A stretch of 64,000 nucleotides of DNA from Phyllobates terribilis (GCF_046119375.1 NW_027362761.1:63488001-63552000), one strand, 5' to 3'; counted from the stretch's first letter, positions 6,861 to 61,401 are shown. Made by a program: numbers and translations. The notes: generated by a model not told the origin, from the sequence alone.

Positions 6861-6886
6861 TCGCAGCCCAGGTAGGGGGGAGGCTG

Positions 6887-9735: not shown

Positions 9736-11415
9736 ACGTCTTCATCTCTGCAATTCTCTCGTGGTGCTGTCATGGTCGACCGATAGTCATAAGTTACTTA
9801 CCGGTAACGGGATTTTTCGGCGACCATGACAGCACCCTTATATTCCCTCCCTTCACTTTATAGGAGCACTCCTCGTTTATTAATTATAATTTTCTCAATT
9901 AGTGGTGTTGTATAAAAATATTATTTTCATGACTGTTTACTATGTCTACTAACCTGGTGGTCCTCTCAATGCTCTGTAATCCAAACTGAGGCGAGAGAGA
10001 GGGCCGCCCCTTTTAACCCTGTAGGTTTCCTGTCCTTGGTGGGCGGATCCCCTCTCTCGTGGTGCTGTCATGGTCTCCGAAAAATCTCGTTGCCGGTAAG
10101 TAACTTATGACTTTTAAGCAAGCCGAAGATACTCGATTAGCACCCAAGCATGCTCGGATAACCCCTTAGCCAAGCCCGCTCGCTCATCACTAGCGGCCAT
10201 GTCTGTTTAAGTGACGGCCATCAAGCAGCGGTGAACAACAAACAAGCGGCCATGCACAGCTGCTGGGGGAACGGCCCAGGCCCACTGCCCCCGGACCGGA
10301 AATGGATGCCGACGCGGTGTCCCCGACGGTGAGTGGGTCCCGGCACTTGCCTAGGTGCTGACGCCGGCCTTGTATATAAGGACTATAATGCTGATAATCT
10401 ACATAAAACATGAAATCTCCAGTTAATCTATTAAAGTCACTCTTTTCACAAAGGAAATTTGAAATATAGTTGTATAGAGAAATATATATCTATACCGATT
10501 TATTGCAACTTGTCTGTGACATCAGACGTCATGATATGAAAGGTACCTGTAAATAAGTAAATTAGGTGGTGCCATACATTGAATACACAATTAGCATGCA
10601 TATGTTCATTTGATCCATTAAAAGAAGGGACTAGCTACGACCACATATATGCGATGTGTGGGAGGGGGCCACTGAGTGGTCTTTTTGCACTAATTTTCCT
10701 CCCACACATCCCATATATGTGGTCGTACCTAGTCCCTTCTTTTAAAGGATCAAATAAAGTATTAATAATTTTACATTGTGGAAGCTGGATTTTCTTTACT
10801 TGCAAGTGTGTATCTGGCAGAGATGGTTCTCTGTGCTTCACTTCACGAATCAACTGGGACTATCAAGGGTGAGCTAAAATAACGGTCTTGTTATACATCT
10901 GCATATGTTCATGTCTTCCAAAAACAGTACCAACAAAACAAATTAGATATTATATTTGGCTTTTCATTTTTACCACCAAAAAAGTATTATACAAAAAATG
11001 TGACTCTATATGGCACATATGACTTTGTGATCAATATTATTTCCTGCCTGAGATCTTCTACAACTGGTATTGAGTATCAGTCCTGCAAATAAAATGGCCT
11101 TTGTACTTGTCATCTAGGGTACACGTAAACAACAACAACAACACTAGGATTATGTAGGTTTAATATAGCGAATGATGGGACTCCTGCCAAAATAAATGTA
11201 CGATCATTGTATAAGGGCTTCAGAATAAATAGATTGTATCCAAATTTAGCTGGTCCATTACTATACTTCCTAGACATGGAAAAAGTGCTCATAAGTATCA
11301 TATTTGTTGGTATCCAGCAAATTAAAGATGTTATTAAAGCCTGTAGGTGAATAATGCCGCCAGAAATGTATCATGAAAGGGTAGTAAGAATGCTGCATCT
11401 AACAGACTAGATGTA

Positions 11416-13046
11416 CAGTACAGACCAAAAGTTTGGATACACCTTTTCATTTAAAAATGTTTCTGTATTTTCACGACTATGAAAATTGGACATTCACACT
11501 GAAGGCATCAAAACTATGAATTAACACATGTGGAATTATATACGTAACAAAAAAGTGTGAAACAACTGAAAATATGTCTTATATTCTAGGTTCTTCAAAG
11601 TAGCCACCTTTTGCTTTGATGACTGCTTTGCACACTCTTGGCATTCTCTTGATGAGCTTCAAGAGGTAGTCACCGGAAATGGTTTTCACTTCACAGGTGT
11701 GCCCTGTCAGGTTTAATAAGTGGGATTTCTTGCCTTATAAATGGGGTTGGGACCATCAGTTGTGTTGTGCATAAGTCAGGTGGATACACAGCTGATAGTC
11801 CTACTGAACAGACTGTTAGAATTTGTATTATGGCAAGAAAAAAGCAGCTAAGTAAAGAAAAACGAGTGGCCATCATTACTTTAAGAAATGAAGGTCAGTC
11901 AGTCCGAAAAATTGGGCAAACTTTGAAAAGTGTCCCCAAGTGCAGTTGCAAAAACCATCAAGCGCCACAAAGAAACTGGCTGACATGAGGACCGCCCCAG
12001 GAAAGGAAGACCAAGAGTCACCTCTGCTTCTGAGGATAAGTTTATCCGAGTCACCAGCCACAGAAATCGCAGGTTAACAGCAGCTCAGATTAGAGACCAG
12101 GTCAATGCCACACAGAGTTCTAGCAGCAGACACATCTCTACAACTACTGTTAAGAGGAGACTTTGTGCAGCAGGCCTTCGTGGTAAAATAGCTGCTAGGA
12201 AACCACTGCTAAGGACAGGCAACAAGCAGAAGAGACTTGTTTGGGCTAAAGAACACAAGGAATGGACATTAGACCAGTGGAAATCTGTGCTTTGGTCTGA
12301 TGAGTCCAAATTTGAGATCTTTGGTTCCAACCACCGTGTCTTTGTGCGACGCAGAAAAGGTGAACGGATGGACTCTACATGCCTGGTTCCCACCGTGAAG
12401 CATGGAGGAGGAGGTGTGATGGTGTGGGGGTGCTTTGCTGGTGACACTGTTGGGGATTTATTCAAAATTGAAGGCATACTGAACCAGCATGGCTACCACA
12501 GTATCTTGCAGCGGCATGCTATTCCGTCTGGTTTGTGTTTAGTTGGACCATCATTTATTTTTCAACAGGACAATGACCCCAAACACACCTCCAGGCTGTG
12601 TAAGGGCTATCTGACCAAGAAGGAGAGTGATGGGGTGCTACGCCAGATGACCTGGCCTCCACAGTCACCAGACCTGAACCCAATCGAGATGGTTTGGGGT
12701 GAGCTGGACCGCAGAGTGAAGGCAAAAGGGCCAACAAGTGCTAAGCATCTCTGGGAACTCCTTCAAGATTGTTGGAAGACCATTTCCGGTGACTACCTCT
12801 TGAAGCTCATCAAGAGAATGCCAAGAGTGTGTAAAGCAGTCATCAAAGCAAAAGGTGGCTACTTTGAAGAACCTAGAATATAAGACATATTTTCAGTTGT
12901 TTCACACTTTTTTGTTAAGTATATAATTCCACATGTGTTAATTCATAGTTTTGATGCCTTCAGTGTGAATGTCCAATTTTCATAGTCATGAAAATACAGA
13001 AAAATCTTTAAATGAGAAGGTGTGTCCAAACTTTTGGTCTGTACTG
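11416..13046 (+). mobile_element. Tc1-like DD38E (Intruder-type) element, full length, transposase disrupted
   Basis: TA TSD; 268-bp TIRs starting CAGTACAGACCAAAAG. ORF ATG 11830 to TAA 12883, with a frameshift at ~11927 and TGA at ~11981. 38 residues between QQD and NPIE. Confidence 0.92.
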
Positions 13047-14130: not shown

Positions 14131-15692
14131 CACTGTGTTCAGAATTATTAGGCAAATGCGTATTTTGATCACTTGATACTTTTTCTACATGTTGTCCTAC
14201 TCCAAGCTGCATAGGCTTGAGAGCCAACTACTAATTAAGTAAATCTGGTGATGTGCATCTCTGTAATGAGGAGGGGTGTTGACTAATGACATCAACACCC
14301 TATATAAGGTGTGCTTAATTATTAGGCAACTTCCTTTCCTTTGGCAAAATGGGTCAGAAGAGAGATTTGACGGGCTCTGAAAAGTCCAAAATTGTGAGAT
14401 GTCTTGTTGAGGGATGCAGCAGTCTTGAAATTTCCAAACTTTTGAAGCGTGATCACGGAACAATCAAGCGTTTCATGGAAAATAGCCAACAAGGTCGCAA
14501 GAAGCGTGTTGGCCAAAAAAGGCACAAAATAACTGCCCATGAATTGAGGAAAATCAAGCGTGAAGCTGCCAAGATGCCATTCGCCACCAGTTTTGCCATA
14601 TTTCAGAGCTGCAACGTTACTGGAGTATCAAAAAGCACAAGGTGTGCGATACTCAGGGACATGGCCAAGGTAAGGAATGCTGAAAAACGACCACCTTTGA
14701 ACAAGAAACCGAAGATAAAAGTTCAAGAATGGTTCAAGAAATATCTTAAGACTGATTTCTCAAAGGTTTTATGGACTGATGAAATGAGAGTGACTCTTGA
14801 TGGGCCAGATGGATGGACCAGAGGCTGGATCAGTAAAGGGCAGAGAGCTCCACTCCGACTCAGAAGCCAGAAAGGTGGAGGTGGGGTCCTGGTATGGGCT
14901 GGTATCATCAAAGATGAACTTGTGGGACCTTTTCGGGTTGAGGATGGAGTGAAGCTCAACTCCCAGACCTACTGCCAGTTTCTGGAAGACAAGTTCTTCA
15001 AGCAGTGGTACAGGAAGAAGTCGGTAACGTTCAAGAAAAACATGATTTTCATGCAGGACAATGCGCCATCACATGCATCCAACTACTCCACAGCGTGGCT
15101 GGCCAGTAAAGGTCTAAAAGAAGAAAAAATAATGACATGGGCCCCTTGTTCACCTGATCTGAACCCCATAGAGAACCTATGGTCCATCATAAAATGTGAG
15201 ATCTACAGGGAGGGAAAACAGTACACCTCTCTATACAGTGTCTGGTAGGCTGTGGTGGCTGCTGCACGCAATGTTGATCGAAAACAGATCAAGCAACTGA
15301 CAGAATCTATGGATGGAAGGCTGTTGAGTGTCATCATAAAGAAAGGTGGCTATATTGATCACTAATTATTTTGGTTTTTGTTTTTGCATGTCAGAAATGT
15401 TTATTTCTAAATTTTGTGCACTGATACTGGTTTACCTGGTGAAAATAAACAAGTGAAATGGGATTATATTTGTTTTTTATTAAGTTGTCTAATAATTCGG
15501 GACAGTAATAGTTACCTGCACAAACAGATATCCTCCTAAGATAGCCAAATCTAAAAAAATCCCACTCCAACTTCCAAAAATATTAAGCTTGGATATTTAT
15601 GAGTCTTTTGGGTTGATTGAGAACATAGTTGTTGATCAACAATAAAAATAATCCTCTAAAATACAATTTGCCTAATAATTCAGAACACAGTG
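14131..15692 (+). mobile_element. Tc1-like DD37E (TRT-type) element, one nonsense codon from intact
   Basis: TA TSD; ~28-bp TIR CACTGTGTTCAGAATTATTAGGCAAAT; 1562 bp. ORF 14349-15365 (338 codons) with TAG at 15246-15248; 37 residues between MQD and NPIE. Confidence 0.88.
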
Positions 15693-17313: not shown

Positions 17314-18879
17314 CAGTCATGGCCAAAAGTATTGAGAATGAGACAAATAGTAATTTTTCCAAAGTTTACTGCTTCATTTTTTGTAATGGCAATTTGCATA
17401 TACTCCTGAATGTCAAAGAGTGATCAGCTTAACAGCAATTACTGTACTTGCAAAGTCAATATTTGCCCAGAAAATGAACTTTAACCCCCAAAACACATTT
17501 TAACATCATTGCAGTCCTGCCTTAAAAGGAGCAGCTAACATCGTTTTAGTGATTGATCGCCAGCCCTGTCCTCATCAACACCCACACCTGTGTTAATGGA
17601 TCAATCAGTCATGATTAAGTAAGAATGACATCACTGGACACTTTAAAAGGAGGCTGGTTCTTGGTATCATTGTTTCTCTTCAGTTAACCATGGTTGTCTC
17701 TAAAGAAACACGTGCAGCCATCATTGCACTGCACAAAAATGGCCTAACAGGGAAGAGTATCGCAGCTACAAAGATTGCACCTCAGTCAATAATCTATCGC
17801 ATCATCAAGAACTTCAAGGAGAGAGCTTCCATTGTTGTCCAAAAGGCTCCAGGGCGCCCAAGAAAGACCAGCAAGCGCCAGGACCGTATCTTAAAACTGT
17901 TACAGCTGCGGGATCGGACTACCAGCAGTGCCGAGCTTGCTCAGGAATGGCAGCAGGCTGGTGTGAGTGCTTCTGCACGCACTGTGAGACGGAGACTCTT
18001 TGAGCAAGGGCTGGTTTCAAGGAGGGCAGCAAAGAAGCCACTTCTCTCCAGAAAAAACATCAGGGACCGACTGATATTCTGCAAAAGGTACAGGGAGTGG
18101 ACTGCTGAGGACTGGGGCAAAGTCATTTTCTCTGATGAATCCCCTTTTCGATTGTTTGGGACATCTGGAAAACAGCTTATTCGGAGAAGAAGAGGTGAGC
18201 GCTACCACCAGTCTTGTCTCATGCCAACTGTAAAGCATCCTGAAACCATTCATGTGTGGGGTTGCTTCTCAGCCAAGGGAATCGGCTCACTCACCGTCTT
18301 GCCTAAAAACACAGCCATGAATAAAGAATGGTACCAGAATGTCCTCCAAGAGCAACTTCTCCCAACCGTCCAAGAGCAGTTTGGCGCCCAAAAATGCCTT
18401 TTCCAGCATGATGGAGCACCTTGCCATAAAGCAAAGGTGATAACAAAATGGCTCATGGAACAAAACATAGAGATTTTGGGTCCATGGCCTGGAAACTCCC
18501 CAGATCTTAATCCCATTGAGAACTTGTGGTCAATCATCAAGAGACGGGTGGACAAACAAAAACCAACAAATTCTGGCAAAATGCAAGCATTGATTATGCA
18601 AGAATGGACTGCTATCAGTCAGGATTTGGTCCGAAAGTTGATTGAGAGCATGCCAGGGAGAATTACAGAGGTCTTGAAGAAGAAGGGGCAACACTGCAAA
18701 TATTGACTTGCTGCATTATCTCGTTCTGTCAATATAACCTATTGGTACTCATAATATGATTGCAATTATATTTCTGTATGTGATATAAACATCAGACAAA
18801 CACTAATAAAAACCAGAGGCCAGCAGATCATGTGAAAATATAATTTTGGTGTCATTCTCAAAACTTTTGGCCATGACTG
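17314..18879 (+). mobile_element. Tc1-like DD35E (Traveler-type) element, intact
   Basis: TA TSD; 28-bp TIRs CAGTCATGGCCAAAAGT...; 1566 bp. Confidence 0.92.
17690..18706 (+). CDS. Intact DD35E transposase, 338 aa
   Basis: Uninterrupted ORF with HTH region, GRPRK, FSDE, QHDGAPCH and SPDLNPIE; 35 residues between the second D and E. Confidence 0.92.
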   Translation: MVVSKETRAAIIALHKNGLTGKSIAATKIAPQSIIYRIIKNFKERASIVVQKAPGRPRKTSKRQDRILKLLQLRDRTTSSAELAQEWQQAGVSASARTVRRRLFEQGLVSRRAAKKPLLSRKNIRDRLIFCKRYREWTAEDWGKVIFSDESPFRLFGTSGKQLIRRRRGERYHQSCLMPTVKHPETIHVWGCFSAKGIGSLTVLPKNTAMNKEWYQNVLQEQLLPTVQEQFGAQKCLFQHDGAPCHKAKVITKWLMEQNIEILGPWPGNSPDLNPIENLWSIIKRRVDKQKPTNSGKMQALIMQEWTAISQDLVRKLIESMPGRITEVLKKKGQHCKY

Positions 18880-20508: not shown

Positions 20509-20651
20509 TAGTGTTGAGCGAATTTGTTATCTGCGTGACAGCGTGGCAAATCAGGGATGTTCATGGGCGGAGCCGATTTTTTGGCGCGAACAAGCCGGAT
20601 CCCCGAACACGAACCCGAAATTGAAATGCCGAACAAATTCGCTCAACACTA
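20509..20651. mobile_element. 143-bp hAT MITE
   Basis: TAGTGTTGAGCGAATTTGTT / AACAAATTCGCTCAACACTA; perfect 8-bp TSD ATCCCAAG. Confidence 0.9.
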
Positions 20652-31099: not shown

Positions 31100-32729
31100 C
31101 AGTACAGACCAAAAGTTTGGACACACCTTCTCATTTAAAGATTTTTCTGTATTTTCATGACTATGAAAATTGTACATTCACACTAAAGGCATCAAAACTA
31201 TGAATTAACACATGTGGAATTATATACTTAACAAAAAAGTGTGAAATAGCTGAAAATATGTCTTATATTCTAGGTTCTTCAAAGTAGCCACCTTTTGCTT
31301 TGATGACTGCTTTACACACTCTTGGCATTCTCTTGATGAGCTTCAAGAGGTAGTCACCGGAAATGGTCTTCCAACAATCTTGAAGGAGTTCCCAGAGATG
31401 CTTAGCACTTGTTGTCCCTTTTGCCTTCACTCTGCGGTCCAGGTCACCCCAAACCATCTCAATTGGGTTCAGGTCTGGTGACTGTGGAGGCCAGGTCATC
31501 TGGCGTAGCACCCCATCACTCTCCTTCTTGGTCAAGTAGCTCTTACACAGCCTGGAGGTGTGTTTGGGGTCATTGTCCTGTTGAAAAGTAAATGATGGTC
31601 CAACTAAATGCAAACCGGATGGAATAGCATGCCGCTGCAAGATGCTGTGGTAGCCATGCAGGTTCAATATGCCTTCAATTTTGAATAAATCCCCAACAGC
31701 GTCACCAGCAAAGCACCCCCACACCATCACACCTCCTCCTCCATGCTTCACGGTGGGAACCAGGCATGTAGACTCCATCCATTCACCTTTTCTGTGTCGC
31801 AGAAAGACACGGTGGTTGGAACCAAAGAACTCAAATTTGGACTCATCAGACAAAAGCACAGATTTCCACTGGTCTAATGTCCATTCCTTGTGTTCTTTAG
31901 CCCAAACAAGTCTCTTCTGCTTGTTGCCTGTCCTTAGCAGTGGTTTCCTAGCAGCTATTTTACCATGAAGGCCGGCTGCACAAAGTCTCCTCTTAACAGT
32001 TGTTGAAGAGATGTGTCTGCTGCTAGAACTCTGTGTGGCATTGAACTGGTCTCTAATCTGAGCTGCTGTTAACCTGAGATTTCTCAGGCTGGTGACTCGG
32101 ATAAACTTATCCTCAGAAGCAGAGGTGACTCTTGGTCTTCCTTTCCTGTGGCGGTCCTCATGTGAGCCAGTTTCTTTGTAGCGCTTGATGGTTTTTGCAA
32201 CTGCACTTGGGGACACTTTCAAAGTTTGCCCAATTTTTCGCACTGACTGACCTTCATTTCTTAAAGTAATGATGGCCACTCATTTTTCTTTACTTAGCTG
32301 CTTTTTTCTTGCCATAATACAAATTCTAACAGTCTATTCAGTAGGACTATCAGCTGTGTATCCACCAGAGTTCTGCACAACACAACTGATGGTCCCAACC
32401 CCACTTATAAGGCAAGAAATCCCACTTATTAAACCTGACAGGGCACACCTGTGAAGTGAAAACCATTTCCGGTGACTACCCCTTGAAGCTCATCAAGAGA
32501 ATGCCAAGAGTGTGCAAAGCAGTCATTAAAGCAAAAGGTGGCTACTTTGAAGGACCTAGAATATAAGACATATTTTCAGTTGTTTCACACTTTTTTGTTA
32601 AGTATATAATTCCACATGTGTTAATTCATAGTTTTGATGCCTTTAGTGTGAATGTACAATTTCCATAGTCAGGAAATTACAGAAAAATCTTTAAATGAGA
32701 AGGTGTGTCCAAACTTTTGGTCTGTACTG
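31100..32729 (-). mobile_element. DD38E Tc1 element, full length; single nonsense codon at codon 12
   Basis: TA TSD. ATG at 32315, TGA at 32280-32282, then 338 open codons to 31263. Confidence 0.92.
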
Positions 32730-36049: not shown

Positions 36050-39000
36050 GTTTGTATGGATTTTTATGTATATGCTGCCTGCATGTGTGTGTGTACAGTG
36101 TGTGTATATGCCTGTGTGTGTGTGTACAGTGTGTGTATATGCCTGTGTGTGTATATGCCTGCATGTGTGTGTATATGCATGCATGTGTGTGTACAGTGTG
36201 TGTATATGCCTGTTTGTATATGCCTGTGTGTGTACAGTGTGTGTATATGCCTGTGTGTACAGTGTGTGTACAGTGTGTGTATATGCCTGTGTGTGTATAT
36301 GCCTGTGTGTACAGTGTGTGTGTATATGCCTGTGTGTACAGTGTGTGTATATGCCTGTGTGTACAGTGTGTGTATATATGCCTGTGTGTACAGTGTGTGT
36401 ATATGCCTGTATGTGTACAGTGTGTGTATATGCCTGTGTGTGTACAGTATGTGTAGTGTGTGTATATGCCTGTGTGTACAGTGTGTGTATATGCCTGTGT
36501 GTGTACATGCCTGTGTGTACAGTATGTGTACAGTGTGTGTATATGCCTGTGTGTGTACAGTATGTGTACAGTGTGTGTATATGCCTGTGTGTACAGTGTG
36601 TGTATATGCCTGTGTGTGTACAGTATGTGTACAGTGTGTGTATATGCCTGTGTGTATATGCCTGTGTGTGTACAGTGTGTGTATATGCCTGTGTGTATAT
36701 GCCTGTGTGTGTACAGTATGTGCCTGTGTGTGTACAGTGTTTATATGCCTGTGTGTGTGTATATGCCTGTGTGTGTACAGTGTGTATATGCCTGTGTGTG
36801 TGTGTACAGTGTGTGTATATGCCTGTGTGTGTACAGTGTGTGTATATGCCTGTGTGTGTGTACAGTGTGTGTACTGTGTGTGTATATGCCTGTGTGTGTG
36901 TACAGTGTGTGTATATGCCTGTGTGTGTGTACAGTGTGTGTATATGCCTGTGTGTGTACAGTGTGTGTATATGCCTGTGTGTATATGCCTGTGTGTGTGT
37001 ACAGTGTGTGTATATGCCTGTGTGTGTGTAGTGTGTGTATATGCCTGTGTGTATATGCCTGTGTGTGTACAGTGTGTGTATATGCCTGTGTGTACAGTAT
37101 GTGTACAGTGTGTGTATATGCCTGTGTGTACAGTATGTGCCTGTGTGTGTACAGTGTGTATATGCCTGTGTGTACAGTGTGTGTATATGCCTGTGTGTGT
37201 ACAGTGTGTGTATATGCCTGTGTGTATATGCCTGTGTGTGTACAGTATGTGCCTGTGTGTGTAGTGTGTATATGCCTGTGTGTACAGTGTGTGTATATGC
37301 CTGTGTGTGTACAGTGTGTATATGCCTGTGTGTATATGCCTGTGTGTGTACAGTATGTGCCTGTGTGTACAGTGTGTATATGCCTGTGTGTGTACAGTGT
37401 GTATATGCCTGTGTGTGTGTGTACAGTGTGTGTATATGCCTGTGTGTGTACAGTGTGTGTATATGCCTGTGTGTGTACAGTGTGTGTACTGTGTGTGTAT
37501 ATGCCTGTGTGTGTGTACAGTGTGTGTATATGCCTGTGTGTGTACAGTGTGTGTATATGCCTGTGTGTATATGCCTGTGTGTGTGTACTGTGTGTGTATA
37601 TGCCTGTGTGTGTGTACAGTGTGTGTATATGCCTGTGTGTGTGTACAGTGTGTGTATATGCCTGTGTGTGTACAGTGTGTATATGCCTGTGTGTGTGTAC
37701 AGTGTGTGTATATGCCTGTGTGTATATGCCTGTGTGTGTGTACAGTGTGTGTATATGCCTGTGTGTGTACAGTGTGTGTATATGCCTGTGTGTGTACAGT
37801 ATGTGTACAGTGTGTGTATATGCCTGTGTGTATATGCCTGTGTGTACAGTATGTGCCTGTGTGTGTGTACAGTGTGTATATGCCTGTGTGTGTACATTGT
37901 GTGTATATGCCTGTGTGTGTACATTGTGTGTATATGCCTGTGTGTGTACAGTGTGTGTATATGCCTGTGTGTGTACAGTGTGTGTATATGCCTGTGTGTA
38001 CAGTGTGTGTACTGTGTGTGTATATGCCTGTGTGTGTGTACAGTGTGTGTATATGCCTGTGTGTGTATATGCCTGTGTGTGTATATGCCTGTGTGTATAT
38101 GCCTGTGTGTGTGTACAGTGTGTGTATATGCCTGTGTGTGTGTACAGTGTGTGTATATGCCTGTGTGTATATGCCTGTGTGTGTGTACAGTGTGTGTATA
38201 TGCCTGTGTGTGTGTACAGTGTGTGTATATGCCTGTGTGTATATGCCTGTGTGTGTGCAGTGTGTGTATATGCCTGTGTGTATATGCCTGTGTGTGTGTA
38301 CAGTGCGTGTATATGCCTGTGTGTATATGCCTGTGTGTATATGCCTGTGTGTATATGCCTGTGTGTATATGCCTGTGTGTGTATATGCCTGTGTGTGTGT
38401 ACAGTGTGTGTATATGCCTGTGTGTATATGCCTGTGTGTGTGTACAGTGCGTGTATATGCCTGTGTGTATATGCCTGTGTGTATATGCCTGTGTGTATAT
38501 GCCTGTGTGTATATGCCTGTGTGTGTATATGCCTGTGTGTGTATATGCCTGTGTGTGTACAGTGTGTGTATATGCCTGTGTGTGTGTACAGTGTGTGTAT
38601 ATGCCTGTGTGTATATGCCTGTGTGTGTGTACAGTGTGTGTATATGCCTGTGTGTATATGCCTGTGTGTACAGTGTGTGTATATGCCTGTGTGTGTACAG
38701 TATGTGTACAGTGTGTGTATATGCCTGTGTGTATATGCCTGTGTGTACAGTATGTGCCTGTGTGTGTGTACAGTGTGTATATGCCTGTGTGTACAGTGTG
38801 TGTATATGCCTGTGTGTGTACATTGTGTGTATATGCCTGTGTGTGTACATTGTGTGTATATGCCTGTGTGTGTACAGTGTGTGTATATGCCTGTGTGTGT
38901 GTACAGTGTGTGTATATGCCTGTGTGTATATGCCTGTGTGTGTGTACAGTGTGTGTATATGCCTGTGTGTGTGTACAGTGTGTGTATATGCCTGTGTGTA

Positions 39001-39450
39001 TATGCCTGTGTGTGTGCCTGTGTGTGTGCAGTGTGTGTATATGCCTGTGTGTATATGCCTGTGTGTGTGTACAGTGTGTGTATATGCCTGTGTGTGTGCC
39101 TGTGTGTGTACAGTGTGTATGTGCCTGTGTGTGTGTACAGTGTGTGTATACAGTGTGTGTTTATATGCCTGTGTGTGTGTGTATATGCCTGTGCGTGCGT
39201 GTGTGTGTGTATATATGCCTGTGTGTGTGTATATGCCTGTGTGTATATATGCCTGTATGTGTGTGTGTGTGTGTGTGTGTATATGCCTGTATGTGTGCGT
39301 GTGTGTATATGCCTGTGTGTCTATATGCCTGTGTGTGTCCATTGTGTATGCCTGTGTTCTTATGTGTCTTCACACGTGTGTTTGTGCTTCCCTGCGTGTC
39401 TGCATTTCTGTGTGTGCTTGCCTGTGTGTGTACGTGTCCCCATTTCTGTG
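36050..39450. repeat. 3.4-kb compound TG-rich satellite
   Basis: Alternation of (GT)n-ATATGCCT and (GT)n-ACAGT words. Confidence 0.97.
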
Positions 39451-41776: not shown

Positions 41777-42077
41777 TAGTGCTGAGTGAGCGTGGTCGGA
41801 CAAGGTGTTATCTCAGCATGTTCGGGTGTTATCCAGGTATCTTGTAGTGCTCTGCTAATATGCTCGAGTCCCTGCGGTAACATGTTTTGCGGCGGTAGAC
41901 AGAAGCAACACATGCAGTGATTACCTAACAAACAGGCAATTCCTGCATGTGTTGCGTCTGCCTGCAAAACATGCTACCCTGGGGACTCGAGCATATTAGC
42001 AGAACATTACAAGATACCTGGATAACACCCGAGCATGCTGGGATCACACCTTATCCGACCACGCTCGCTCAGCACTA
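41777..42077. mobile_element. 301-bp palindromic hAT MITE
   Basis: TAGTGCTGAG...CTCAGCACTA; perfect TSD GTTGCCAG; central hairpin resembles that of 4241-10192. Confidence 0.88.
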
Positions 42078-51180: not shown

Positions 51181-51237
51181 ATTTTCATTAAAAAAAATGC
51201 TTTGAAACTTTTTAACTATACTTTTATCAAGATACTA

Positions 51238-52874
<1,637 letters not shown>

Positions 52875-53159
52875 TATTACATTTATTTAAAAATAAATTT
52901 TCCAGCAGACATTACAAATAAAGCAAACTCTAAGGTTGTGTTATGACTAGTGTTGAGCGATACCTTCCGATATCAGGAAATATCGTATCGGATTGGATCG
53001 GGCCGATACCCAAAAAGTATCGGATATCGCCGATTCCGATACCGGAAACCAATGCAAGTCAATGGGACACAAATATCGGAATGAAAATAAACCCTTTCTT
53101 TCCTTGTAGGTTAATTCTACATGAAGGAAAACAACTAAGAATAATGTAGAATGACATGA

Positions 53160-53740
53160 AAAGCCGGCAATTCATCAGCGGCATACACCGGTACCCGACA
53201 ATTTACAACAGAAAGAATAGAGCTTCACACATAGATTAGATAGATAGAAACATGTCAGTCACATATATATGAAGTACAGTGACAGTGTTGCTTACTGTAC
53301 TTGTCATTTAGTGTAAAGGATTTATTAAAAAAAATATTAGTGTTTTCGTGCACCGTCTCTTTAAAAAAGCCGGCCGGCAATTCAGCATCTGTACCCGACA
53401 ATTTATAACAGACAGAATAGAGCTTCACACATAGATTAGATAGATAGAAACATGTCAGTCACATATATAAGAAGTACAGTGACAGTGTTGCTTACAGAAC
53501 TTGTCATTTAGTGTAAAGGATTTATTTAAAAAAATAATAGTGTTTTCATGCACCGTCTCTTTAAGAAAGCCGGCCGGCAATTCAGCAGTGGTACCCGACA
53601 ATTTAGAATAGAAGGAATAGAGAATCACACATAGATTAGATAGATAGAAACATGTCAGTCACATATATATGAAGTACAGTGACAGTGTTGGTTACTGTAC
53701 TTGTCATTTAGTGTTAAAATAAAGGATTTATTTAAAAAAA
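53160..53740. repeat. ~200-bp tandem triplication inside the hAT element
   Basis: GTACCCGACAATTT...ACATAGATTAGATAGATAG...GTCATTTAGTG recurs at ~53191, ~53392 and ~53591. Confidence 0.85.
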
Positions 53741-56700
53741 AATTGGCGTGGGGTTCCCCTTAATTTTAGGCTCTAGCGGAGGTTAAGCAGACAGCTGGGG
53801 CAAATGTTTGAAGCCTGGGAAGGGGGTAATACCCACGGAGCTTCCCAGGCTACTAATATCAGCCCCCAGCTGAATACCTAGCCTTTACTAGCTATTAAAA
53901 TGGGGGACCCCCCCAAAAAAATGACGTGGGGTCCCCCCTAATTTAATAGCTAGCAAAGGCTAGGCAGACAGCTGGGGGCTGATATTAATAGCCCAGGAAG
54001 GGAGCCATGAATATTGGCCCCCTCCCAGGCTAGAAACACCAGCCGTCAGCCGCCCCAGAAATGGCGCATCCATAGGATGCGCCAATTCTGGCACTTAGCC
54101 TCGCTCTTCCACGCTGCCCTGGTGCGGTGGCAGGGGGTAATAGGGTTGGGGTTGATGTCAGCTTATAATGCCAGCTGACATCAAGCCCAGGTTAGTAATG
54201 GAGAGGCGTCTATAAGACACCCCCATTACTAACCCCATAGTCAAAGTTAAAAGAAAACACAAACACCCAGAATAAAGTCCTTTAATTGAAATAAAGACAC
54301 AATTCTTTATTGTTCTAAATTAAACCATACTTACCATCACGCCCATTCCAGCTGAAGCCAACGATCTCCTGCAATAAAAGAAAAATAATAAAGCAACCTC
54401 ATCCTTACCTTTCGATGGTTCCCAGGACAGCTCCAGCTCTGCTACATCGAGATGACAGGCTGGACCGCAGCAGAAAGCTGCCATCCAGCCTGTCATCCCG
54501 CAGACACTGAGAAGGCAGGCATGCTTGCGCTCCTCAGTGTCTCTCTGTGACGTCATCCAGATGAGCCGAGTTCATGTCCAATGAACTCAGCTCACCTCAT
54601 GCACGTCACTGACAGCGTGGGAAAATTCTCCTGCACTCAGCGCTTCAGCGTGAGAATTCTCCCACGCTGTCAGTGACATACATGAGGTGAGGTCATGTCC
54701 AATGAACTCAGCTCACCTCATGCACGTCACTGACAGCGTGGGAAAATTCTCACGCTGAAGTGCTGAGTGCAGGAGAATTTTCCCACGCTGTCAGTGACGT
54801 ACATGAAGTGAGCGGAGTTCATTGGACATGACCTCGGCTCATCTGGATGCCGTCACAGCCAGACACTGAGGAGTGGAAGTATGCCTGCGCTTCTCAGTGT
54901 CTGCGGGATGACAGGATGGATGGCAGCGTTCTGCTGCGGTCCAGCCTGTCATCTCGATGTAGCAGAGCTGAAGCTGTCGTGGGAGCCATGGAAAGGTAAG
55001 GATGAGGTTGCTTTATTATTTTACTTTTATTGCAGGAGATCGTTGGCTTCAGCTGGAATGGGCGTGGTGGTAAGTATGGTTTAATTTAGAACAATAAAGA
55101 ATTGTGTGTTTATTTCAATTAAAGGACTTTTTTCTGGGTGTTGTGTTTTTTTAAATACTTTACTAGAAATTCATGGTGGTCATGTCTAATATTGGCGTGA
55201 CCCCATGAATTTTGGGCTTAGGGCCAGCTGATAATGCCAAGCTGGCCTTAACCCCTTTATTACCCAGTGAGCCACCGCACCAGGGCCCTGGATGAGTTGG
55301 GTACAGCGCCAGAAGATGGCGCTTCTATGAACGCGCCATTTTCTGGGGCGGCTGCGGACTGCAATTTGCAGCGGGGGTGGCCCAGAAAGCTTGGGTCTCC
55401 CTGCGCTGCGGATTCCAGCCCCCAGCTGCCTAGTTGTATCTGGCTGGGCACAAAAATAGGGCGAAGCCCCACGCATTTTTTTTTAAAATTATTTCATGAA
55501 ATTCATGGAATAATTAAGAAAAAAAGGGCTTCCCTATATTGTTGTGTCCAACCAGGTACAAATAGGCAGCTGGTGGTTGGGGGCAGCCCATTCCTGCCTG
55601 CTGTACCTGGCTGGACACAAATATAGTGCGAAGCCCCACGTCAATTTTTTTTTAATTATTTCATGAAATAATTTTTTTAAAAAAGGGCTTCCCTATATTG
55701 TTGTGTCCGGCCAGGTACAAATAGGCAGCTGGTGGTTGGGGGCAGCCTGTTCCTGCCTGCTGTACCTGGCTGGACACAAATATAGGGCGAAGCCCCACGT
55801 CAATTTTTTTTAAAATAAGTCCTTTATTTTAACACTAAATGACATTTGAGGAGTTAATAAAGATGCAGTCCCTAAATTATTATTTATTTTTTAATTAATT
55901 TTTCCCAAAACTTTTGACGTGGGCTTCGCCATATTTTTGTATGCCAGCCAGGTACAGCATCCAGCTTCTATGAACGCGCCATTTTCCGGGGTGGCTGCGC
56001 ACTGCAATTTTCAGCGGGGGGAGGGGGGGGGGCAGAAAGCTTGGGCCTCCCTGCGCTGCAGATTCCATCCCCCAGCTGCCTAGTTGTACCTGGCTGGACA
56101 CAAAAATAGGGAGAAGCTTCACGTATTTTTTTTTTTTAATTATTTCATGAAATTCATGAAATAATTAAGAAAAAAAGGGCTTCCCTATATTGTTGTGTCC
56201 AACCAGGTACAAATAGGCAGCTGGTGGTTGGGGGCAGCCCGTTCCTGCCTGCTGTACCTGGCTGGACACAAATATAGTGCGAAGCCCCACGTCAATTTTT
56301 TTTAAATCATTTCAGGAAATTCATGAAATAATTTAAAAAAATTGATGTGGGGCTTCGCCCTATATTTGTGTCCAGTCAGGTACAGCAGGCAGGAACGGGC
56401 TGCCCCCAACCACCAGCAGCCTATTTGTACCTAGCCGGACACAACAATATAGGGAAGCCCTTTTTTTCTGAATTATTCCATGAATTTCATGAATTTAAAA
56501 AAAAAAAAACGTGGAGCTTCGCCCTATTTTTGTGTCCAGCCAGGTACAACTAGGCAGCTGGGGGCTGGAATCTGCAGCGCAGGGAGGCCCAAGCTTTCTG
56601 GGCCCCACCCGCTGCAAATTGCAGTCCGCAGCCGCCCCGGAAAATGGCGCGTTCATAGAAGCGCCATCTTCTGGCGCTGTACCCAACTCATCCAGGGCCC

Positions 56701-59700
56701 TGATGCGGTGGCTCACTGGGTAATAAAGGGGTTAAGGCCAGCTTGGCATTATCAGCTGGCCCTAAGCCCGAAATTCATGGGGTCACGCCAATATTAGACA
56801 TGACCACCATGAATTTCTAGTAAAGTATTTAAAAAAAACACAAACACCCAGAAAAAAGTCCTTTAATTGAAATAAACACACAATTCTTTATTGTTCTAAA
56901 TTAAACCATACTTACCATCACGCCCATTCCAGCTGAAGCCAACGATCTCCTGCAATAAAAGAAAAATAATAAAGCAACCTCATCCTTACCTTTCCATGGC
57001 TCCCACGACGGCTCCAGCTCTGCTACATCGAGATGACAGGCTGGACCGCAGCAGAACGCTGCCATCCAGCCTGTCATCCCGCAGACACTGAGAAGCGCAG
57101 GCATACTTCCACTCCTCAGTGTCTGGCTGTGACGGCATCCAGATGAGCCGACAATGAACTCGGCTCACCTCATGTACGTCACTGACAGCGTGGGAGAATT
57201 CTCCTGCACTCAGCGCTTCAGCGTGAGAATTTTCCCACGCTGTCAGTGACGTGCATGAGGTGAGGTCATGTCCCATGAACTCGGCGCACCTCATGCACGT
57301 CACTGACAGCGTGGGAGAATTCTCACGCTGAAGCGCTGAGTGCAGGAGAATTTTCCCACGCTGTCAGTGACGTGCATGAGGTGAGCTGAGTTCATTGGAC
57401 ATGACCTCGGCTCATCTGGATGACGTCACAGAAAGACACTGAGGAGCGCAAGCATGCCTGCGCTTCTCAGTGTCCGCGGGATGACAGGCTGGATGGCAGC
57501 GTTCTGCTGCGGTCCAGCCTGTCATCTCGATGTAGCAGAGCTGAAGCTGTCCTGGGAACCATGGAAAGGTAAGGATGAGGTTGCTTTATTATTTTACTTT
57601 TATTGCAGGAGATCGTTGGCTTCAGCTGGAATGGGTGTGGCGGTAAGTATGGTTTAATTTAGAACAATAAAGAATTGTGTCTTTATTTCAATTAAAGGAC
57701 TTTTTTCTGGGTGTTTGTGTTTTTTTTAAATACTTTACTAGAAATTCATGGCGGTCATGTCTAATATTGGCGTGACCCCATGAATTTCGGGCTTAGGGCC
57801 AGCTGATAATGCCAAGCTGGCCTTAACCCCTTTATTACCCAGTGAGCCACCGCACCAGGGCCCTGGATGAGTTGGGTACAGCGCCAGAAGATGGCGCTTC
57901 TATGAACGCGCCATTTTCCGGGGCGGCTGCGGACTGCAATTTGCAGCGGGTGGGACCCAGAAAGCTTGGGTCTCCCTGCGCTGCAGATTCCAGCCCCCAG
58001 CTGCCTAGTTGTACCTGGCTGGACACAAAAATAGGGCGAAGCGCCACACATTTTTTTTTTTAATTATTTCATGAAATTCATGGAATAATTAAGAAAAAAA
58101 GGGCTTCCCTATATTGTTGTGTCCGGCTAGGTACAAATAGGCAGCTGGTGGTTGGGGGCAGCCCGTTCCTGCCTGCTGTACCTGGCTGGACACAATTATA
58201 GGGCGAAGCCCCACATAATTTTTTTTTAATTATTTCATGAATTTCCTGAAATAATTAAAAAAAAATTGACGTGGGGCTTCACACTATATTTGTGTCCAGC
58301 CAGGTACAGCAGGCAGGAACGGGCTGCCCCCAACCACCAGCTGCCTATTTGTACCTAGCCGGACACAACAATATAGGGAAGCCCTTTTTTTCTTAATTAT
58401 TCCATGAATTTCATGAAATAATTAAAAAAAAAAAACGTGGAGCTTCTCCCTATTTTTGTGTCCAGCCAGGTACAACTAGGCAGCTGGGGGATGGAATCTG
58501 CAGCGCAGGGAGGCCCAAGCTTTTTGCCCTCCCCCCCCCCGCTGAAAATTGCAGTCCGCGGCCGCCCCGGAAAATGGCGCGTTCATAGAAGCTGGATGCT
58601 GTACCTGGCTGGCATACAAAAATATGGCGAAGCCCACGTCAAAAGTTTTGGGAAAAATTTATTAAAAAATAAATAATAATTTAGGGACTGCATCTTTATT
58701 AAGTCCTCAAATGTCATTTAGTGTTAAAATAAAGGATTTATTTAAAAAAAAAATGGCGTGGGATCCCCCATAATTTTAGTCTCTAGCGGAGGTTAAGCAG
58801 ACGGCTGGGGCAGATGTTTGAAGCCTGGGAAGGGGGTAAAACCCACGGAGCTTCCCAGGCTACTAATATCAGCCCCCAGCTGAATACCTAGCCTTTACTA
58901 GCTATTAAAATGGGGGACCCCCCAAAAAAAAATGACGTGGGGTCCCCTCTATTTTAATAGCTAGCAAAGGCTAGGCAGACAGCTGGGGGCTGATATTAAT
59001 AGCTCAGGAAGGGTGCCATGAATATTGGCCCCCTCCCAGGCTAGAAACACCAGCCGTCAGCCGCCCCAGAAATGGCGCATCCATAGGATGCGCCAATTCT
59101 GGCACTTAGCCTCGCTCTTCCACGCTGCCCTGGTGCGGTGGCAGGGGGTAATAGTGGTGGGGTTCATGTCAGCGCCAGCTGCCATGAAGCCCAGGTTAGT
59201 AATGATGGCCGTCTATATGACACCCCCATTACTAACCTACAAAGTGTTAAAAAGAAAAAACACACTACACCCAGAAAAAAATAATTTATTTGAAATAAAA
59301 CACCATTTTATTTAATTCTTAGTTTACTAAAAAAAAATAGTTACCTGTCCACGTTCCTGCGCTGATCTCCCATGCACAGCTGTCACATCTGGAGATGGTG
59401 ACAGCTGTGCATGGCTGCTGTAAGCTCACGCTGCCGGGAACACGTCCGCTCCCGGCAGCGGGAGCCACTGACTGAGGTCACCGGAGTGCATTCAGGCAGC
59501 GCAGCTCCGGAGACCTCCTTTACGGCAGTGCTGTACCGTGGGAATTTCTCACGATACAGCAGTGCCGTAAAGGAGCTAACCGGAGCAGCGCTGCCTGAAC
59601 TCCGGTGAACCCTTACGGCCCCGTCATTCTAGCGGCGGCAGCGGTTCAGAGCGGTCACATTCTATGTGGCTGCTCTGAACTGGAGATCTTCGTGGGACAC

Positions 59701-60054
59701 TCGTGGACTACTACGGAGGGGTAAGGATAAGGTTGTGGTTTATTATTTTATATTTTATTACAGGAGATCGATGGCTTCGGGGAATTAGGTGTCTAGGTGA
59801 GTATAGGTGTAGTTTTTTATTTTTTACTTTATTTTAGGTGGCGATCGGCGGGGACAGGTAATGTATGAACTAATTTCTTTTAGGTAACCACTGGCCACCA
59901 ATGACATGTATTTAACATTTATTGGGGCACAGTAGGGCAATTTATATAGCAGGATCAGGCTGATGGGAACTACTGCTCCCATCGAGCTGATCCTGCTGGC
60001 AGGAGTGGACGGGGGACAGACATAGGCCGATGGGAGTAGTAGTGTCACATCGGC

Positions 60055-60188
60055 NNNNNNNNNNNNNNNNNNNNNNNNNNNNNNNNNNNNNNNNNNNNNN
60101 NNNNNNNNNNNNNNNNNNNNNNNNNNNNNNNNNNNNNNNNNNNNNNNNNNNNNNNNNNNNNNNNNNNNNNNNNNNNNNNNNNNNNNNN
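60055..60188. other. Assembly gap (134 N)
   Basis: Run of N. Confidence 1.
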
Positions 60189-61401
60189 AATCATGACGGG
60201 TCGGGAGGTGAGGCTGACCTGTGCGGCCGTGGGAAAGTTGATGTGAGTTCATGCAGTCAAGCATGAACTCACATGAACCCTCTGAGGGCACCGCGGCTAA
60301 TTCAAATGAACAGCTGATCGGCATCACCTGATACCTCAGCTGTTCATTTGAAATAACCGGCGGGAAAGCGCAGCACAGAACGGGAAAGCCGGCGGTGAAG
60401 TCTTTTCACTGCCGGCTTCCCCGCCCGGGTCCTTCGCTCCTTGGTGCTGCGCTCCCCGCCCGGTCCTAATTTACGATCGGGATGGGAGGTGGCGAGGGGA
60501 GCGGAGGATCGGGGTGGGAGGCTGCGGGGAAGCAGTATGGGGCTGCGTGATTGTTTAAAAGCCGGCGGCTTTTTACCGCGCGCCGGCTTTTAAACAATCA
60601 GGAGAATTCTCCCACGCTGGGATGGCATTCTGATGACAAGCTGGATCGCAGCTGAGCGCTGCCATCCAGCTTGTCATCCTTCAGAGACACTGCAGAGCGC
60701 AGGCATTATGGGAACTTCCGATTCCGGTATTCGATATTATAAAAGTATCGGAATTAAGTATCGGAATTCCGATACAGTGAATATCGGCCGATACCCGATA
60801 TTTCAGTATCGGAATGCTCAACACTAGTTATGACATTGTTTTTACATTTATGGGAAAGTGTTTGTTCTCATACGGTGTAGCCATGTCATGATTTTGCGCC
60901 GGCATTTTTCTGTGATTTTGGAGAATCACAGAATGAATACATAACAAATACTTGTGAATTTGCCCTAAGAGCAACAAAAAGCATTGACAGGTTCGCTTGT
61001 GTAAACTAACTTTCATCTGTAGTAACTGCAGCATGCACAGTATTTATATGTACTATAAACCTAAAGTGCCTGCCATCCATTAGTTGCAGCAGCTCATAAT
61101 AACATTAGTAAACATTAAATTAGAAAACTAAAAGACAGGTATGTTTTTAAAGTGTTAGTATGGCAAAATCCCAGTTCAATAAACAGCATAAAAAAATTAA
61201 AAATGTGCAGTTTTTCCAGCACTCCATCATTACATGTAATTGTGAGTACACGCTTAGGGTGCTTTCACCGTTCGGTGGCCCCATTAGGGCTTATGTCCGA
61301 ACCCCACCAGATTCGGATGTATGAGCCGACGGAGCCATAGACTATAATGGTGCTGACAGAGTTGTGCATGATTTTCGGGTCTATACGCTTACTGGAGGCA
61401 G

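What the first reader, a model, noticed from the sequence alone, without database searches (positions are those of the whole stretch)
52948..60826. 7.9-kb protein-free hAT element built as a hairpin of hairpins (foldback-like), apparently moved as one unit
Seen: a perfect GTTATGAC TSD, matching 11-bp TIRs and dense subterminal TATCGG/CCGATA repeats (candidate transposase-binding sites) enclose a 200-bp triplication. They also enclose a ~590-bp self-palindromic module repeated directly (~53700-54290, ~58710-59290), two ~860-bp palindromes, alternating-orientation modules and chains of small hairpins. No transposase is visible. It is far larger and more ordered than a MITE and is the best candidate here for an undescribed system: a modular, structure-rich cargo element with splice cassettes on both strands. 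A 134-N gap limits certainty.
Basis: partly seen in the sequence, partly recalled or inferred. Interest (0 to 1): 0.75.

Follow-up and report, generated by a model that had tools for sequence, protein, structure and literature searches.

The report
Non-coding hAT transposon full of palindromes
This is a real but protein-less "cut-and-paste" (hAT-type) jumping gene, 7.9 kb long, whose inside was built by repeatedly copying its own hairpin-forming DNA forwards and backwards. It is a striking variant of a known kind of element, not a new kind of system.

Summary
The element (52948-60826) has a perfect 8-bp target duplication, GTTATGAC, which fits the hAT target pattern nTnnnnAn. It has perfect 11-bp inverted ends (TAGTGTTGAGC). 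Thirteen of the window's 20 TATCGG motifs sit in its two ends. It has no coding capacity.

89% of it is similar or complementary to another part of itself. Features include a 200-bp tandem repeat (2.6 copies), a 0.6-kb module repeated directly, two ~0.9-kb palindromes, a 3.0-kb palindrome (arms 96% alike, 24-nt spacer) and an 11-fold excess of small hairpins.

Shared variants show that the 0.9-kb palindrome existed first and was then copied in inverted orientation. The arms differ mostly at CpG sites, which points to real decay in the genome rather than read error.

The whole element is not one foldback. The palindromes are internal, and the ends share only the short inverted repeats.

"Moved as one unit" and "splice cassettes" could not be tested.

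The scan noted similar 5-6-kb palindromic non-coding hAT elements elsewhere in this genome (s1-193827, s1-217963, s1-196791). I could not check whether they belong to the same family.

Verdict: a new variant of a known kind, of moderate interest.

The parts
52940..52947 (.). Left copy of the 8-bp target site duplication, GTTATGAC
   Evidence: fits nTnnnnAn (PMC10368747)
52948..52958 (+). Left terminal inverted repeat, TAGTGTTGAGC
52959..53085 (.). Left subterminal region with 6 TATCGG/CCGATA repeats (about GTATCGGAAT) in both orientations; CpG observed/expected 1.42. Candidate transposase (BED-finger) binding sites.
53189..53714 (+). 200-bp tandem repeat, 2.6 copies, 92% matches
53702..54311 (+). 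Module P, copy 1 (direct repeat of 58712-59312, 92% identical); contains an imperfect palindrome 53805-54038
54243..55161 (.). 0.92-kb palindrome, unit 1 (B1 54247-54514, hairpin array C1 54515-54888, B2 inverted 54890-55161; centre 54701.5). It is the core of the looser 1.6-kb palindrome 53915-55482.
   Evidence: DNA fold z -63
55146..55484 (+). Module D, copy 1 (copies at 56499-56837, inverted, and 57721-58060, 96-98% identical; old relative at 53915-54243, 65%)
55426..55816 (+). Module E as a 159-bp tandem repeat (2.4 copies). Elsewhere E occurs as inverted pairs (56128-56509 and 58051-58434).
55794..58762 (.). 3.0-kb palindrome: arms about 1.47 kb, 96.2% identical, 24-nt spacer, centre 57274.5. 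It holds two 0.7-kb side palindromes (55964-56662 and 57896-58592) and the central 0.90-kb palindrome, unit 2 (56828-57730), which is an inverted copy of unit 1.
58712..59312 (+). Module P, copy 2
59313..60054 (.). Non-duplicated right arm, part 1: a chain of small hairpins, an old ~360-nt imperfect palindrome (59347-59708, centre 59545), and an intron-like cassette (59710-59815) 78% like the one in the B modules
60055..60188 (.). Assembly gap (N); length only estimated; not read or filled
60189..60719 (.). Non-duplicated right arm, part 2: a chain of GC-rich small hairpins. The stretch 60632-60706 is 83-84% like the B/C junction of the internal palindromes.
60720..60815 (.). Right subterminal region with 7 TATCGG/CCGATA repeats. 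CpG observed/expected is 1.01 over 60189-60826, the stretch that includes it.
60816..60826 (-). Right terminal inverted repeat (GCTCAACACTA on the + strand)
60827..60834 (.). Right copy of the target site duplication, GTTATGAC

Best explanation
The element is a non-autonomous DNA transposon of the hAT superfamily, with the Ac/hobo/Hermes-type target preference. It inserted into the 8-bp target GTTATGAC, 67 nt past a Tc1-like element.

It encodes nothing. To move, it would need a hAT transposase made elsewhere that binds the GTATCGGAAT-type repeats in its two ~130-bp ends and cuts at the TAGTGTTGAGC termini. This step is inferred.

Its interior is not captured foreign DNA. It grew from the element's own hairpin-rich sequence by repeated tandem and, above all, inverted duplication over a long time. 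The layers run from 65-80% identity (old) to 96-98% (recent). A 0.9-kb palindrome formed first and was then copied in inverted orientation. That copy is now the core of a 3-kb palindrome.

The likeliest motor is a newly made strand that snaps back on an existing hairpin, or switches template, while the element is being copied. This could happen in gap repair after excision or at a stalled replication fork. It would explain why larger palindromes share their centres with smaller hairpins and have loops of only 20-30 nt. This mechanism is inferred, not shown.

The basic modules must have been inside the element when it inserted. Whether the last two or three duplications happened before or after the insertion is open.
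For: hAT-type ends.
- 8-bp TSD, an 11-nt TIR beginning TAGTG (the YARNG type), and a TSD with T at position 2 and A at position 7 (pattern from PMC10368747).
- Two further small elements in the window have TAGTG... ends and 8-bp TSDs fitting the same pattern.
- Subterminal repeats are concentrated in both ends. hAT transposases bind such repeats (PMC10368747).

No coding capacity.

Self-derived interior.
- 89% of bases have a partner inside the element, against 12-66% in six control stretches.
- No part matches anything else in the window.
- Pieces of the unique right arm recur in the palindromic modules at 78-84%.
- There is no internal TIR or TATCGG cluster.

Order of events. Site patterns in the four arms are 10: 3: 0 for 'inverted copy of an existing palindrome': 'direct copy': 'palindromes formed separately'.

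Concentric centres and short loops.

Real decay. CpG-context sites differ between the 3-kb arms 4 times as often as other sites, p = 3e-5.

Selection on the ends. They keep their CpGs (observed/expected 1.0-1.4) while the core is depleted like the background (0.35-0.67 against 0.46). This is as expected if the ends were under selection for transposition until recently.
Against: - No second copy, empty site or autonomous partner was seen, so mobility of this architecture as a unit is unproven.
- The assembly could not be checked with reads. A contig ends 740 nt from the palindromic core.
- The gap's true length is unknown, so something could be hidden in it.
- Nothing in the sequence shows directly which process made the inverted duplications.
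Confidence: 0.72

Rival explanations
1. In-situ growth. A much smaller non-autonomous hAT (about 2.9 kb: ends, tandem repeat, one P module, right arm) inserted here. All the large palindromes then arose at this locus by local replication or repair errors, so the 7.9-kb structure never transposed.
For: - The P modules are direct repeats exactly 5,010 nt apart and bracket the whole palindromic core.
- The most recent events left only about 0.8% change per arm. At that rate a perfect TSD plus TIR (38 nt) is expected about 73% of the time either way, so the clock does not exclude this (my calculation).
Against: - The older layers would predict 2-6 changes in the 38 nt of TSD plus TIR if they post-dated the insertion, and none is seen. 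These layers are C hairpin arms 89-90%, P1/P2 92%, unit 1 arms 93% and D0/D 65%.
- Unverified scan notes report multi-copy 5-6-kb palindromic hAT elements in this genome.
Confidence: 0.2
2. Assembly artefact. The palindromic order is a chimera of reads from several family copies, or a foldback-read artefact near a contig end.
For: - A scaffold gap lies 740 nt from the core.
- Long palindromes and high-copy repeats are hard to assemble.
Against: - The arms differ by 3.8% with a CpG-biased spectrum.
- Arm-specific variants are inherited in a consistent mirrored pattern, 10:3:0.
- Layers of very different age are nested in an orderly way.
- TSD and TIR match across the whole structure and across the gap.
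- A foldback artefact would give near-identical arms at the contig end itself.
Confidence: 0.08
3. Selected structure. The hairpins are functional. Either transcripts fold into long double-stranded RNA that feeds small-RNA silencing of the hAT family (as the maize Mu killer locus does for Mutator), or the palindromes extrude and bring the distant ends together so that a 7.9-kb element transposes like a short one.
For: - 87% of the core pairs in a single-strand fold.
- Hairpins occur at every scale, 11-fold enriched.
- Parts of the palindromes are homologous to the element's own right subterminal arm.
Against: - There is no RNA or small-RNA evidence.
- Rfam gives only sub-threshold generic miRNA-hairpin look-alikes on both strands.
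- The arms decay at a neutral-looking, CpG-biased rate.
- No promoter was identified.
Confidence: 0.1
4. Nest of unrelated insertions. The interior is a pile of independent MITEs or other transposons that landed inside a hAT shell, or a double-Ds-like self-insertion.
For: The window is very rich in transposons, and small palindromic hAT MITEs exist nearby.
Against: - No module recurs elsewhere in the 64 kb.
- There are no internal TAGTGTTGAGC ends or TATCGG clusters.
- I saw no target duplications at the edges of the main palindromes when reading the sequence.
- The modules are related to each other and to the element's own right arm.
Confidence: 0.05

Closest known systems
Non-autonomous hAT elements (maize Ds; hAT-N families and hAT MITEs of animals)
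   Same: 8-bp TSD with the nTnnnnAn pattern, a short TIR beginning YARNG, short subterminal repeats in both ends, no transposase, and presumed mobilisation in trans. Interiors remodelled by faulty gap repair are known for Ds (my own knowledge: Rubin and Levy 1997, 'abortive gap repair').
   Different: The size (7.9 kb), and an interior that is 89% self-similar with palindromes nested from 14-nt to 1.5-kb arms. I found no paper describing such a hAT in frogs.
Double Ds of maize (one Ds inserted in reverse into another)
   Same: A hAT element that is largely an inverted duplication of itself.
   Different: Double Ds keeps internal TIRs and an internal TSD. Here there is no internal TIR or subterminal motif cluster, so the palindromes did not arise by self-insertion.
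Foldback elements (Drosophila FB) and Galileo (P superfamily, long TIRs)
   Same: Large non-coding or mostly non-coding DNA transposons dominated by inverted repeats built of sub-repeats, with modular and variable structure (PMC4168063, PMC3688188).
   Different: In those elements the long inverted repeats are the termini. Here the termini share only 11 nt, the palindromes are internal with several centres, and the flanking 0.6-kb modules are direct repeats. The superfamily also differs.
Palindromes formed by snap-back or template-switch synthesis at short inverted repeats (yeast and mammalian palindromic amplification; short template-switch mutations)
   Same: Inverted duplications with very short spacers, centred on pre-existing small hairpins.
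   Different: Those cases are described for chromosomal breaks and gene amplification, not as the routine growth mode of a transposon's interior. The link here is inferred.
Mu killer (maize): an inverted duplication of a transposon that silences its family through hairpin RNA
   Same: An inverted duplication of the transposon's own sequence with hairpin potential.
   Different: No evidence of transcription or small RNAs here. The duplicated sequence contains no transposase gene.
Palindromic 5-6-kb non-coding hAT elements noted earlier by this scan in the same genome (s1-193827, s1-217963, s1-196791)
   Same: hAT ends, no coding capacity, and nested palindromes several kb long in the same genome. 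They are reported there as high-copy.
   Different: I could not compare sequences, because look-ups by sequence were blank. This copy is longer, has several palindrome centres and direct flanking modules, and is not one spacer-free hairpin.

Membership tests
hAT superfamily (non-autonomous member) | 8-bp target site duplication | tested here: met
   GTTATGAC on both sides; 0.04 such TSD+TIR pairs expected per shuffled window
hAT superfamily (non-autonomous member) | Target preference nTnnnnAn (Ac/hobo/Hermes group) | tested here: met
   GTTATGAC, and the two other TAGTG-ended elements in the window (ATCCCAAG, GTTGCCAG), all have T at position 2 and A at position 7. Pattern as stated for Hermes in PMC10368747.
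hAT superfamily (non-autonomous member) | Short TIRs (about 10-25 bp) beginning YARNG | tested here: met
   TAGTGTTGAGC, perfect over 11 nt. The YARNG rule is from my own knowledge.
hAT superfamily (non-autonomous member) | Short subterminal repeats in both ends (transposase BED-domain binding sites) | tested here: met
   13 TATCGG copies in the terminal ~135 and ~85 nt, none between. Binding itself was not tested.
hAT superfamily (non-autonomous member) | A matching autonomous element encoding a hAT transposase (BED finger, RNase-H-like core, hAT dimerisation domain) with the same ends | not testable with these tools
   No hAT transposase in the window. Scan notes mention intact hAT transposases elsewhere in this genome, but their ends are unknown to me.
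hAT superfamily (non-autonomous member) | Multiple copies at different sites, each with its own TSD | not testable with these tools
Collection scans were blank or gave one chance bacterial hit.
Foldback elements (FB / Galileo type) | Long terminal inverted repeats that reach the ends of the element | tested here: not met
   The ends share only 11 nt plus short motifs. The first 215 nt and the last 120 nt have no partner inside the element. See also the dot plot.
MITE | Small size (under about 800 bp) with TIRs and TSD | tested here: not met
   7,879 bp as assembled
Double-Ds-type composite | Internal copy of the same element with its own TIRs and TSD | tested here: not met
   No internal match to the TIR with up to 3 mismatches in 16 nt, and no internal TATCGG
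Pack-type transposon (captured host gene fragments) | Interior homologous to host genes | tested here: inconclusive
   None of the 13 ORF pieces tested has a significant Pfam match. No relative was found for the 105-aa ORF. No tRNA or Rfam family passed its threshold. The host genome itself could not be searched.

The most novel reading that the evidence does not exclude
The family is a self-reinforcing palindrome builder. Each round of excision and gap repair lets nascent strands snap back on existing hairpins, so a hAT lineage steadily turns its interior into ever longer palindromes and spreads them. That would make hAT activity a main source of long, surprisingly stable palindromes ('foldback DNA') in giant frog genomes. 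Transcripts of such copies might also give long double-stranded RNA that silences the family.
Probability: 0.15. Interest if true: 0.7.

Novelty: new variant of a known kind. Interest (0 to 1): 0.4.

Why it matters
Palindromes of kilobase length with spacers of only 20-30 nt are usually unstable in cells. Here one has persisted in a vertebrate germline long enough for its arms to diverge by about 4% in a CpG-biased way.

If the whole structure is mobile and multi-copy, as scan notes on similar elements in this genome suggest, it offers three things:
- a natural series for studying how vertebrate genomes tolerate, grow and erode long palindromes;
- a test of whether transposon gap repair is a source of palindromes;
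- a test of whether internal structure changes how well a long non-autonomous element transposes.

In practice, such elements are likely to break assemblies, as the nearby gap suggests. They also inflate hairpin and miRNA-like predictions: 70 sub-threshold Rfam matches lie in the 10 kb scanned around the element.

Tried and rejected
There was therefore no check of the assembly, copy number, RNA or small RNA.
2. Collection scans. An internal 23-mer gave 0 hits in metagenome and prokaryote genome contigs. The terminal 20-mer gave 0 hits in genomes and one chance hit in a GC-rich bacterial contig with no hAT features.
3. Earlier findings by sequence or relatives were blank.
4. A protein word search with the 105-aa ORF gave nothing. 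Pfam on 13 ORF pieces gave nothing significant.
5. Rfam gave only sub-threshold miRNA-type hairpin matches on both strands. I reject these as generic hairpin look-alikes. No tRNA was found.
6. A paralogous empty site for the flanks was not found within the window.
7. The MITE at 20509 and the C modules share GACAGCGTGG. I estimate about 0.5 shared 11-mers by chance, so I dropped this as evidence of kinship.
8. Arm-to-arm homogenisation within each 0.9-kb palindrome: 0 supporting sites. The excess of 'private' changes in one arm turned out to be a CACA slippage at the module boundary.
9. Literature. I found no paper on palindromic hAT elements in frogs. The poison-frog genome paper gives only the bulk hAT content.
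Full report
**Observation: the ends**

GTTATGAC lies directly outside both termini, at 52940-52947 and 60827-60834. The termini are perfect 11-nt inverted repeats, TAGTGTTGAGC.

I scanned the window for any 8-bp direct repeat flanking an inverted repeat of at least 9 nt. Shuffled windows give 0.04 such pairs. In the real window the only hits with non-palindromic target repeats and TAGTG-type ends were these:
- this element;
- a 143-bp MITE at 20509-20651 (TSD ATCCCAAG; the same first 13 terminal bases);
- a 301-bp fully palindromic MITE at 41777-42077 (TSD GTTGCCAG);
- one further pair at 4241/10192, described under "noticed in passing".

All three hAT-type TSDs have T at position 2 and A at position 7. 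This is the target pattern stated for the hAT transposase Hermes (PMC10368747).

TATCGG/CCGATA occurs 20 times in 64 kb. Thirteen of these lie in 52967-53079 and 60746-60812, and none lies between. The extended motif is about GTATCGGAAT, in both orientations.

**Observation: the interior**

A 200-bp unit is repeated 2.6 times at 53189-53714. From 53.7 to 59.3 kb the element is a lattice of direct and inverted repeats:
- Module P, about 0.6 kb, occurs twice in direct orientation, at 53702-54311 and 58712-59312 (92% identical).
- Two palindromes of about 0.9 kb lie at 54243-55161 and 56828-57730.
- One 2,969-nt palindrome lies at 55794-58762. Its arms of about 1.47 kb are 96.2% identical (55 substitutions, 5 indels) around a 24-nt spacer. 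It contains the second 0.9-kb palindrome at its centre and a 0.7-kb palindrome in each arm.

89% of the element's bases have a partner elsewhere in the element, and 82% have one in inverted sense. Six control stretches of the same length give 12-66%. Small hairpins (arm at least 14 nt, loop up to 20 nt) occur at 3.0 per kb inside and 0.27 per kb outside.

As single-stranded DNA, the 0.92-kb palindrome folds with z = -63. The two non-duplicated stretches on either side of the gap fold with z = -19 and -15.

The element as a whole is not a hairpin. The first 215 nt and the last 120 nt have no partner inside the element, and the P modules are direct repeats. A minimum-energy fold of 53186-59320 gives three side-by-side hairpin domains with 87% of bases paired.

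**The gap**

I did not read or fill the Ns. The matching TSD and TIR on the two sides of the gap show that both sides belong to one insertion, in the given order and orientation. Both flanks have the same hairpin-chain style.

No reading frame is at stake. ORF pieces abutting the gap have no Pfam match. The true length of the gap is unknown, so "no transposase" holds only for the letters that were read.

**Coding and RNA**

The longest ORF is 119 aa. All ORFs of 96-119 aa, apart from one that reads through the gap, lie in repeated modules. None of the 13 ORF pieces tested has a significant Pfam match. The 105-aa ORF has no relatives in the word search.

There is no tRNA. Rfam gives only sub-threshold miRNA-precursor look-alikes on both strands, which is what any hairpin gives.

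The non-duplicated parts are 52948-53185, 59313-60054 and 60189-60826. They are far too short for a hAT transposase gene.

**Where the interior comes from**

No part of the element matches anything else in the window. There is no internal TIR or TATCGG cluster, so self-insertion of the double-Ds kind and nested same-family insertions are excluded.

Instead, the modules are related to each other and to the element's own unique right arm:
- 59710-59815 is about 78% like the intron-like cassette of the B modules.
- 60632-60706, next to the right subterminal repeats, is 83-84% like the B/C junction.
- The right arm itself holds an old 360-nt imperfect palindrome centred at 59545.
- Module D has an old relative inside P, 65% identical.

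The interior is therefore self-derived, in layers of very different age: 65-80%, 89-93% and 96-98% identity.

**Order of events**

I aligned the four arms of the two 0.9-kb palindromes. Ten sites group the left arm of unit 1 with the right arm of unit 2, and the right arm of unit 1 with the left arm of unit 2. Three sites group left with left. No site groups the two arms of one unit.

So the palindrome already existed, with arms about 3% apart, when it was duplicated. Unit 2 is an inverted copy of unit 1. Each arm has gained about 3 private changes since, roughly 0.8%. There is no sign of arm-to-arm homogenisation in this copy.

**Real sequence or artefact**

Between the 3-kb arms, CpG-context sites are mismatched 12.5% of the time against 3.0% elsewhere (Fisher p = 3e-5). 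That is the signature of decay in methylated vertebrate DNA, not of read error. Together with the mirrored inheritance of variants, it argues against a foldback-read artefact.

A chimera of several family copies cannot be excluded without reads.

**Did it move as one unit?**

No other copy could be reached. An internal clock helps only partly.

If the older layers had formed after insertion, 2-6 changes would be expected in the 38 nt of TSD plus TIR, and none is seen. These layers are the C hairpin arms (89-90%), P1/P2 (92%) and D0/D (65%). For the latest events (about 0.8% per lineage), zero changes are expected about 73% of the time either way.

The ends keep their CpGs (observed/expected 1.42 and 1.01). 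The core is depleted (0.35-0.67), like the background (0.46). This fits ends that were under selection for transposition until recently and an interior that has long drifted.

My reading is that the modules and the older palindromes were carried in, and that the timing of the last inverted duplications is open.

**Mechanism (inferred)**

Larger palindromes share their centres with smaller hairpins (centres 54701.5, 57274.5, 56318.5 and 58242.5), and the spacers are 20-30 nt and partly self-complementary. This is what snap-back self-priming or template switching of a nascent strand would give.

A cut-and-paste element is re-copied by gap repair each time it excises. That repair is known to remodel Ds interiors (my own knowledge: "abortive gap repair"). 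Replication-fork switching has been proposed for sequence gain by TIR transposons in animals (PMC8277862). I could not test which process acted here.

**The "splice cassettes"**

These are alternating GC-rich 20-34-nt and AT-rich GT...AG 26-43-nt stretches, present in both orientations because the B modules are. The intron-like parts are shorter than ordinary vertebrate introns (my own knowledge). No RNA data could be consulted. I treat them as a degenerate repeat, not as evidence of splicing.

**Comparison and novelty**

The element meets every hAT feature that can be tested on a non-autonomous copy. It fails the defining feature of foldback elements (long terminal inverted repeats), of MITEs (small size) and of double Ds (internal ends).

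Literature searches found no description of such palindromic hAT elements in frogs. The dyeing poison frog paper reports only that hAT makes up 3.9% of that assembly.

Notes of this scan describe 5-6-kb palindromic non-coding hAT elements, reported there as high-copy, and intact hAT transposases elsewhere in this genome. I could not verify these or show that they are the same family. The same notes call the genome frog-like. I did not verify that either, although the window's content (Tc1/mariner, a Ty3- or DIRS-like reverse transcriptase, hAT) is compatible.

**Verdict**

This is a real and well-ordered non-coding hAT transposon with a self-built palindromic interior. It is a new variant of a known kind and of moderate interest. 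The open points are whether it moves as a unit, whether the assembly is correct, and whether the hairpins do anything.

Noticed in passing
window 20509-20651: A 143-bp hAT-type MITE with TSD ATCCCAAG and TIR TAGTGTTGAGCGAATT. It has the same first 13 terminal bases as the 7.9-kb element but a different interior and different subterminal motifs. This suggests one transposase lineage served several non-autonomous families.
   Followed up: partly
window 41777-42077: A 301-bp hAT-type MITE that is one hairpin over its whole length, with TSD GTTGCCAG and TIR TAGTGCTGAG.
   Followed up: partly
window 4241-10192: An 8-bp repeat GCGGCCAT flanks TAGTGATGA-type inverted ends about 5.95 kb apart. Inverted repeats of about 100 nt lie at 4449-4546 and 9978-10075, and an RVT_1 plus RNase H ORF lies at 6887-8725. 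It is either a DIRS-like retroelement or a hAT shell with a retroelement nested in it.
   Followed up: no
window 51233-52880: A Tc1/mariner element with ~220-nt inverted ends (85% alike) and a Sleeping-Beauty-type HTH ORF (51576-52409). It ends 67 nt before the hAT insertion site. Further Tc1-like ORFs lie at 12287-12883, 14349-15248, 17690-18706 (338 aa, apparently intact) and 31263-32279 (minus strand).
   Followed up: partly
window 36086-39338: A 3.2-kb strand-biased TG-rich array (27-nt unit TGTGTGTGTACAGTGTGTGTATATGCC, about 118 copies, 72% matches). GC skew is +0.47 and AT skew is -0.47. It creates spurious ORFs of more than 1,000 aa.
   Followed up: partly
window 53706-53730, 58716-58740, 55812-55850 (inverted), and the ends of the 200-bp units: The junction motif TCATTTAGTGTTAAAATAAAGG contains TAGTGTTAAAA, which matches 8 of the 11 TIR bases. 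It marks the start of module P, the end of each 200-bp unit and the outer edges of the 3-kb palindrome. It may be a chance match or a preferred breakpoint or pseudo-end.
   Followed up: no
window 53702-54311 vs 58712-59312: Transversions outnumber transitions between the two P copies (30 to 17), unlike in the 3-kb palindrome arms (22 to 33). Unexplained.
   Followed up: no
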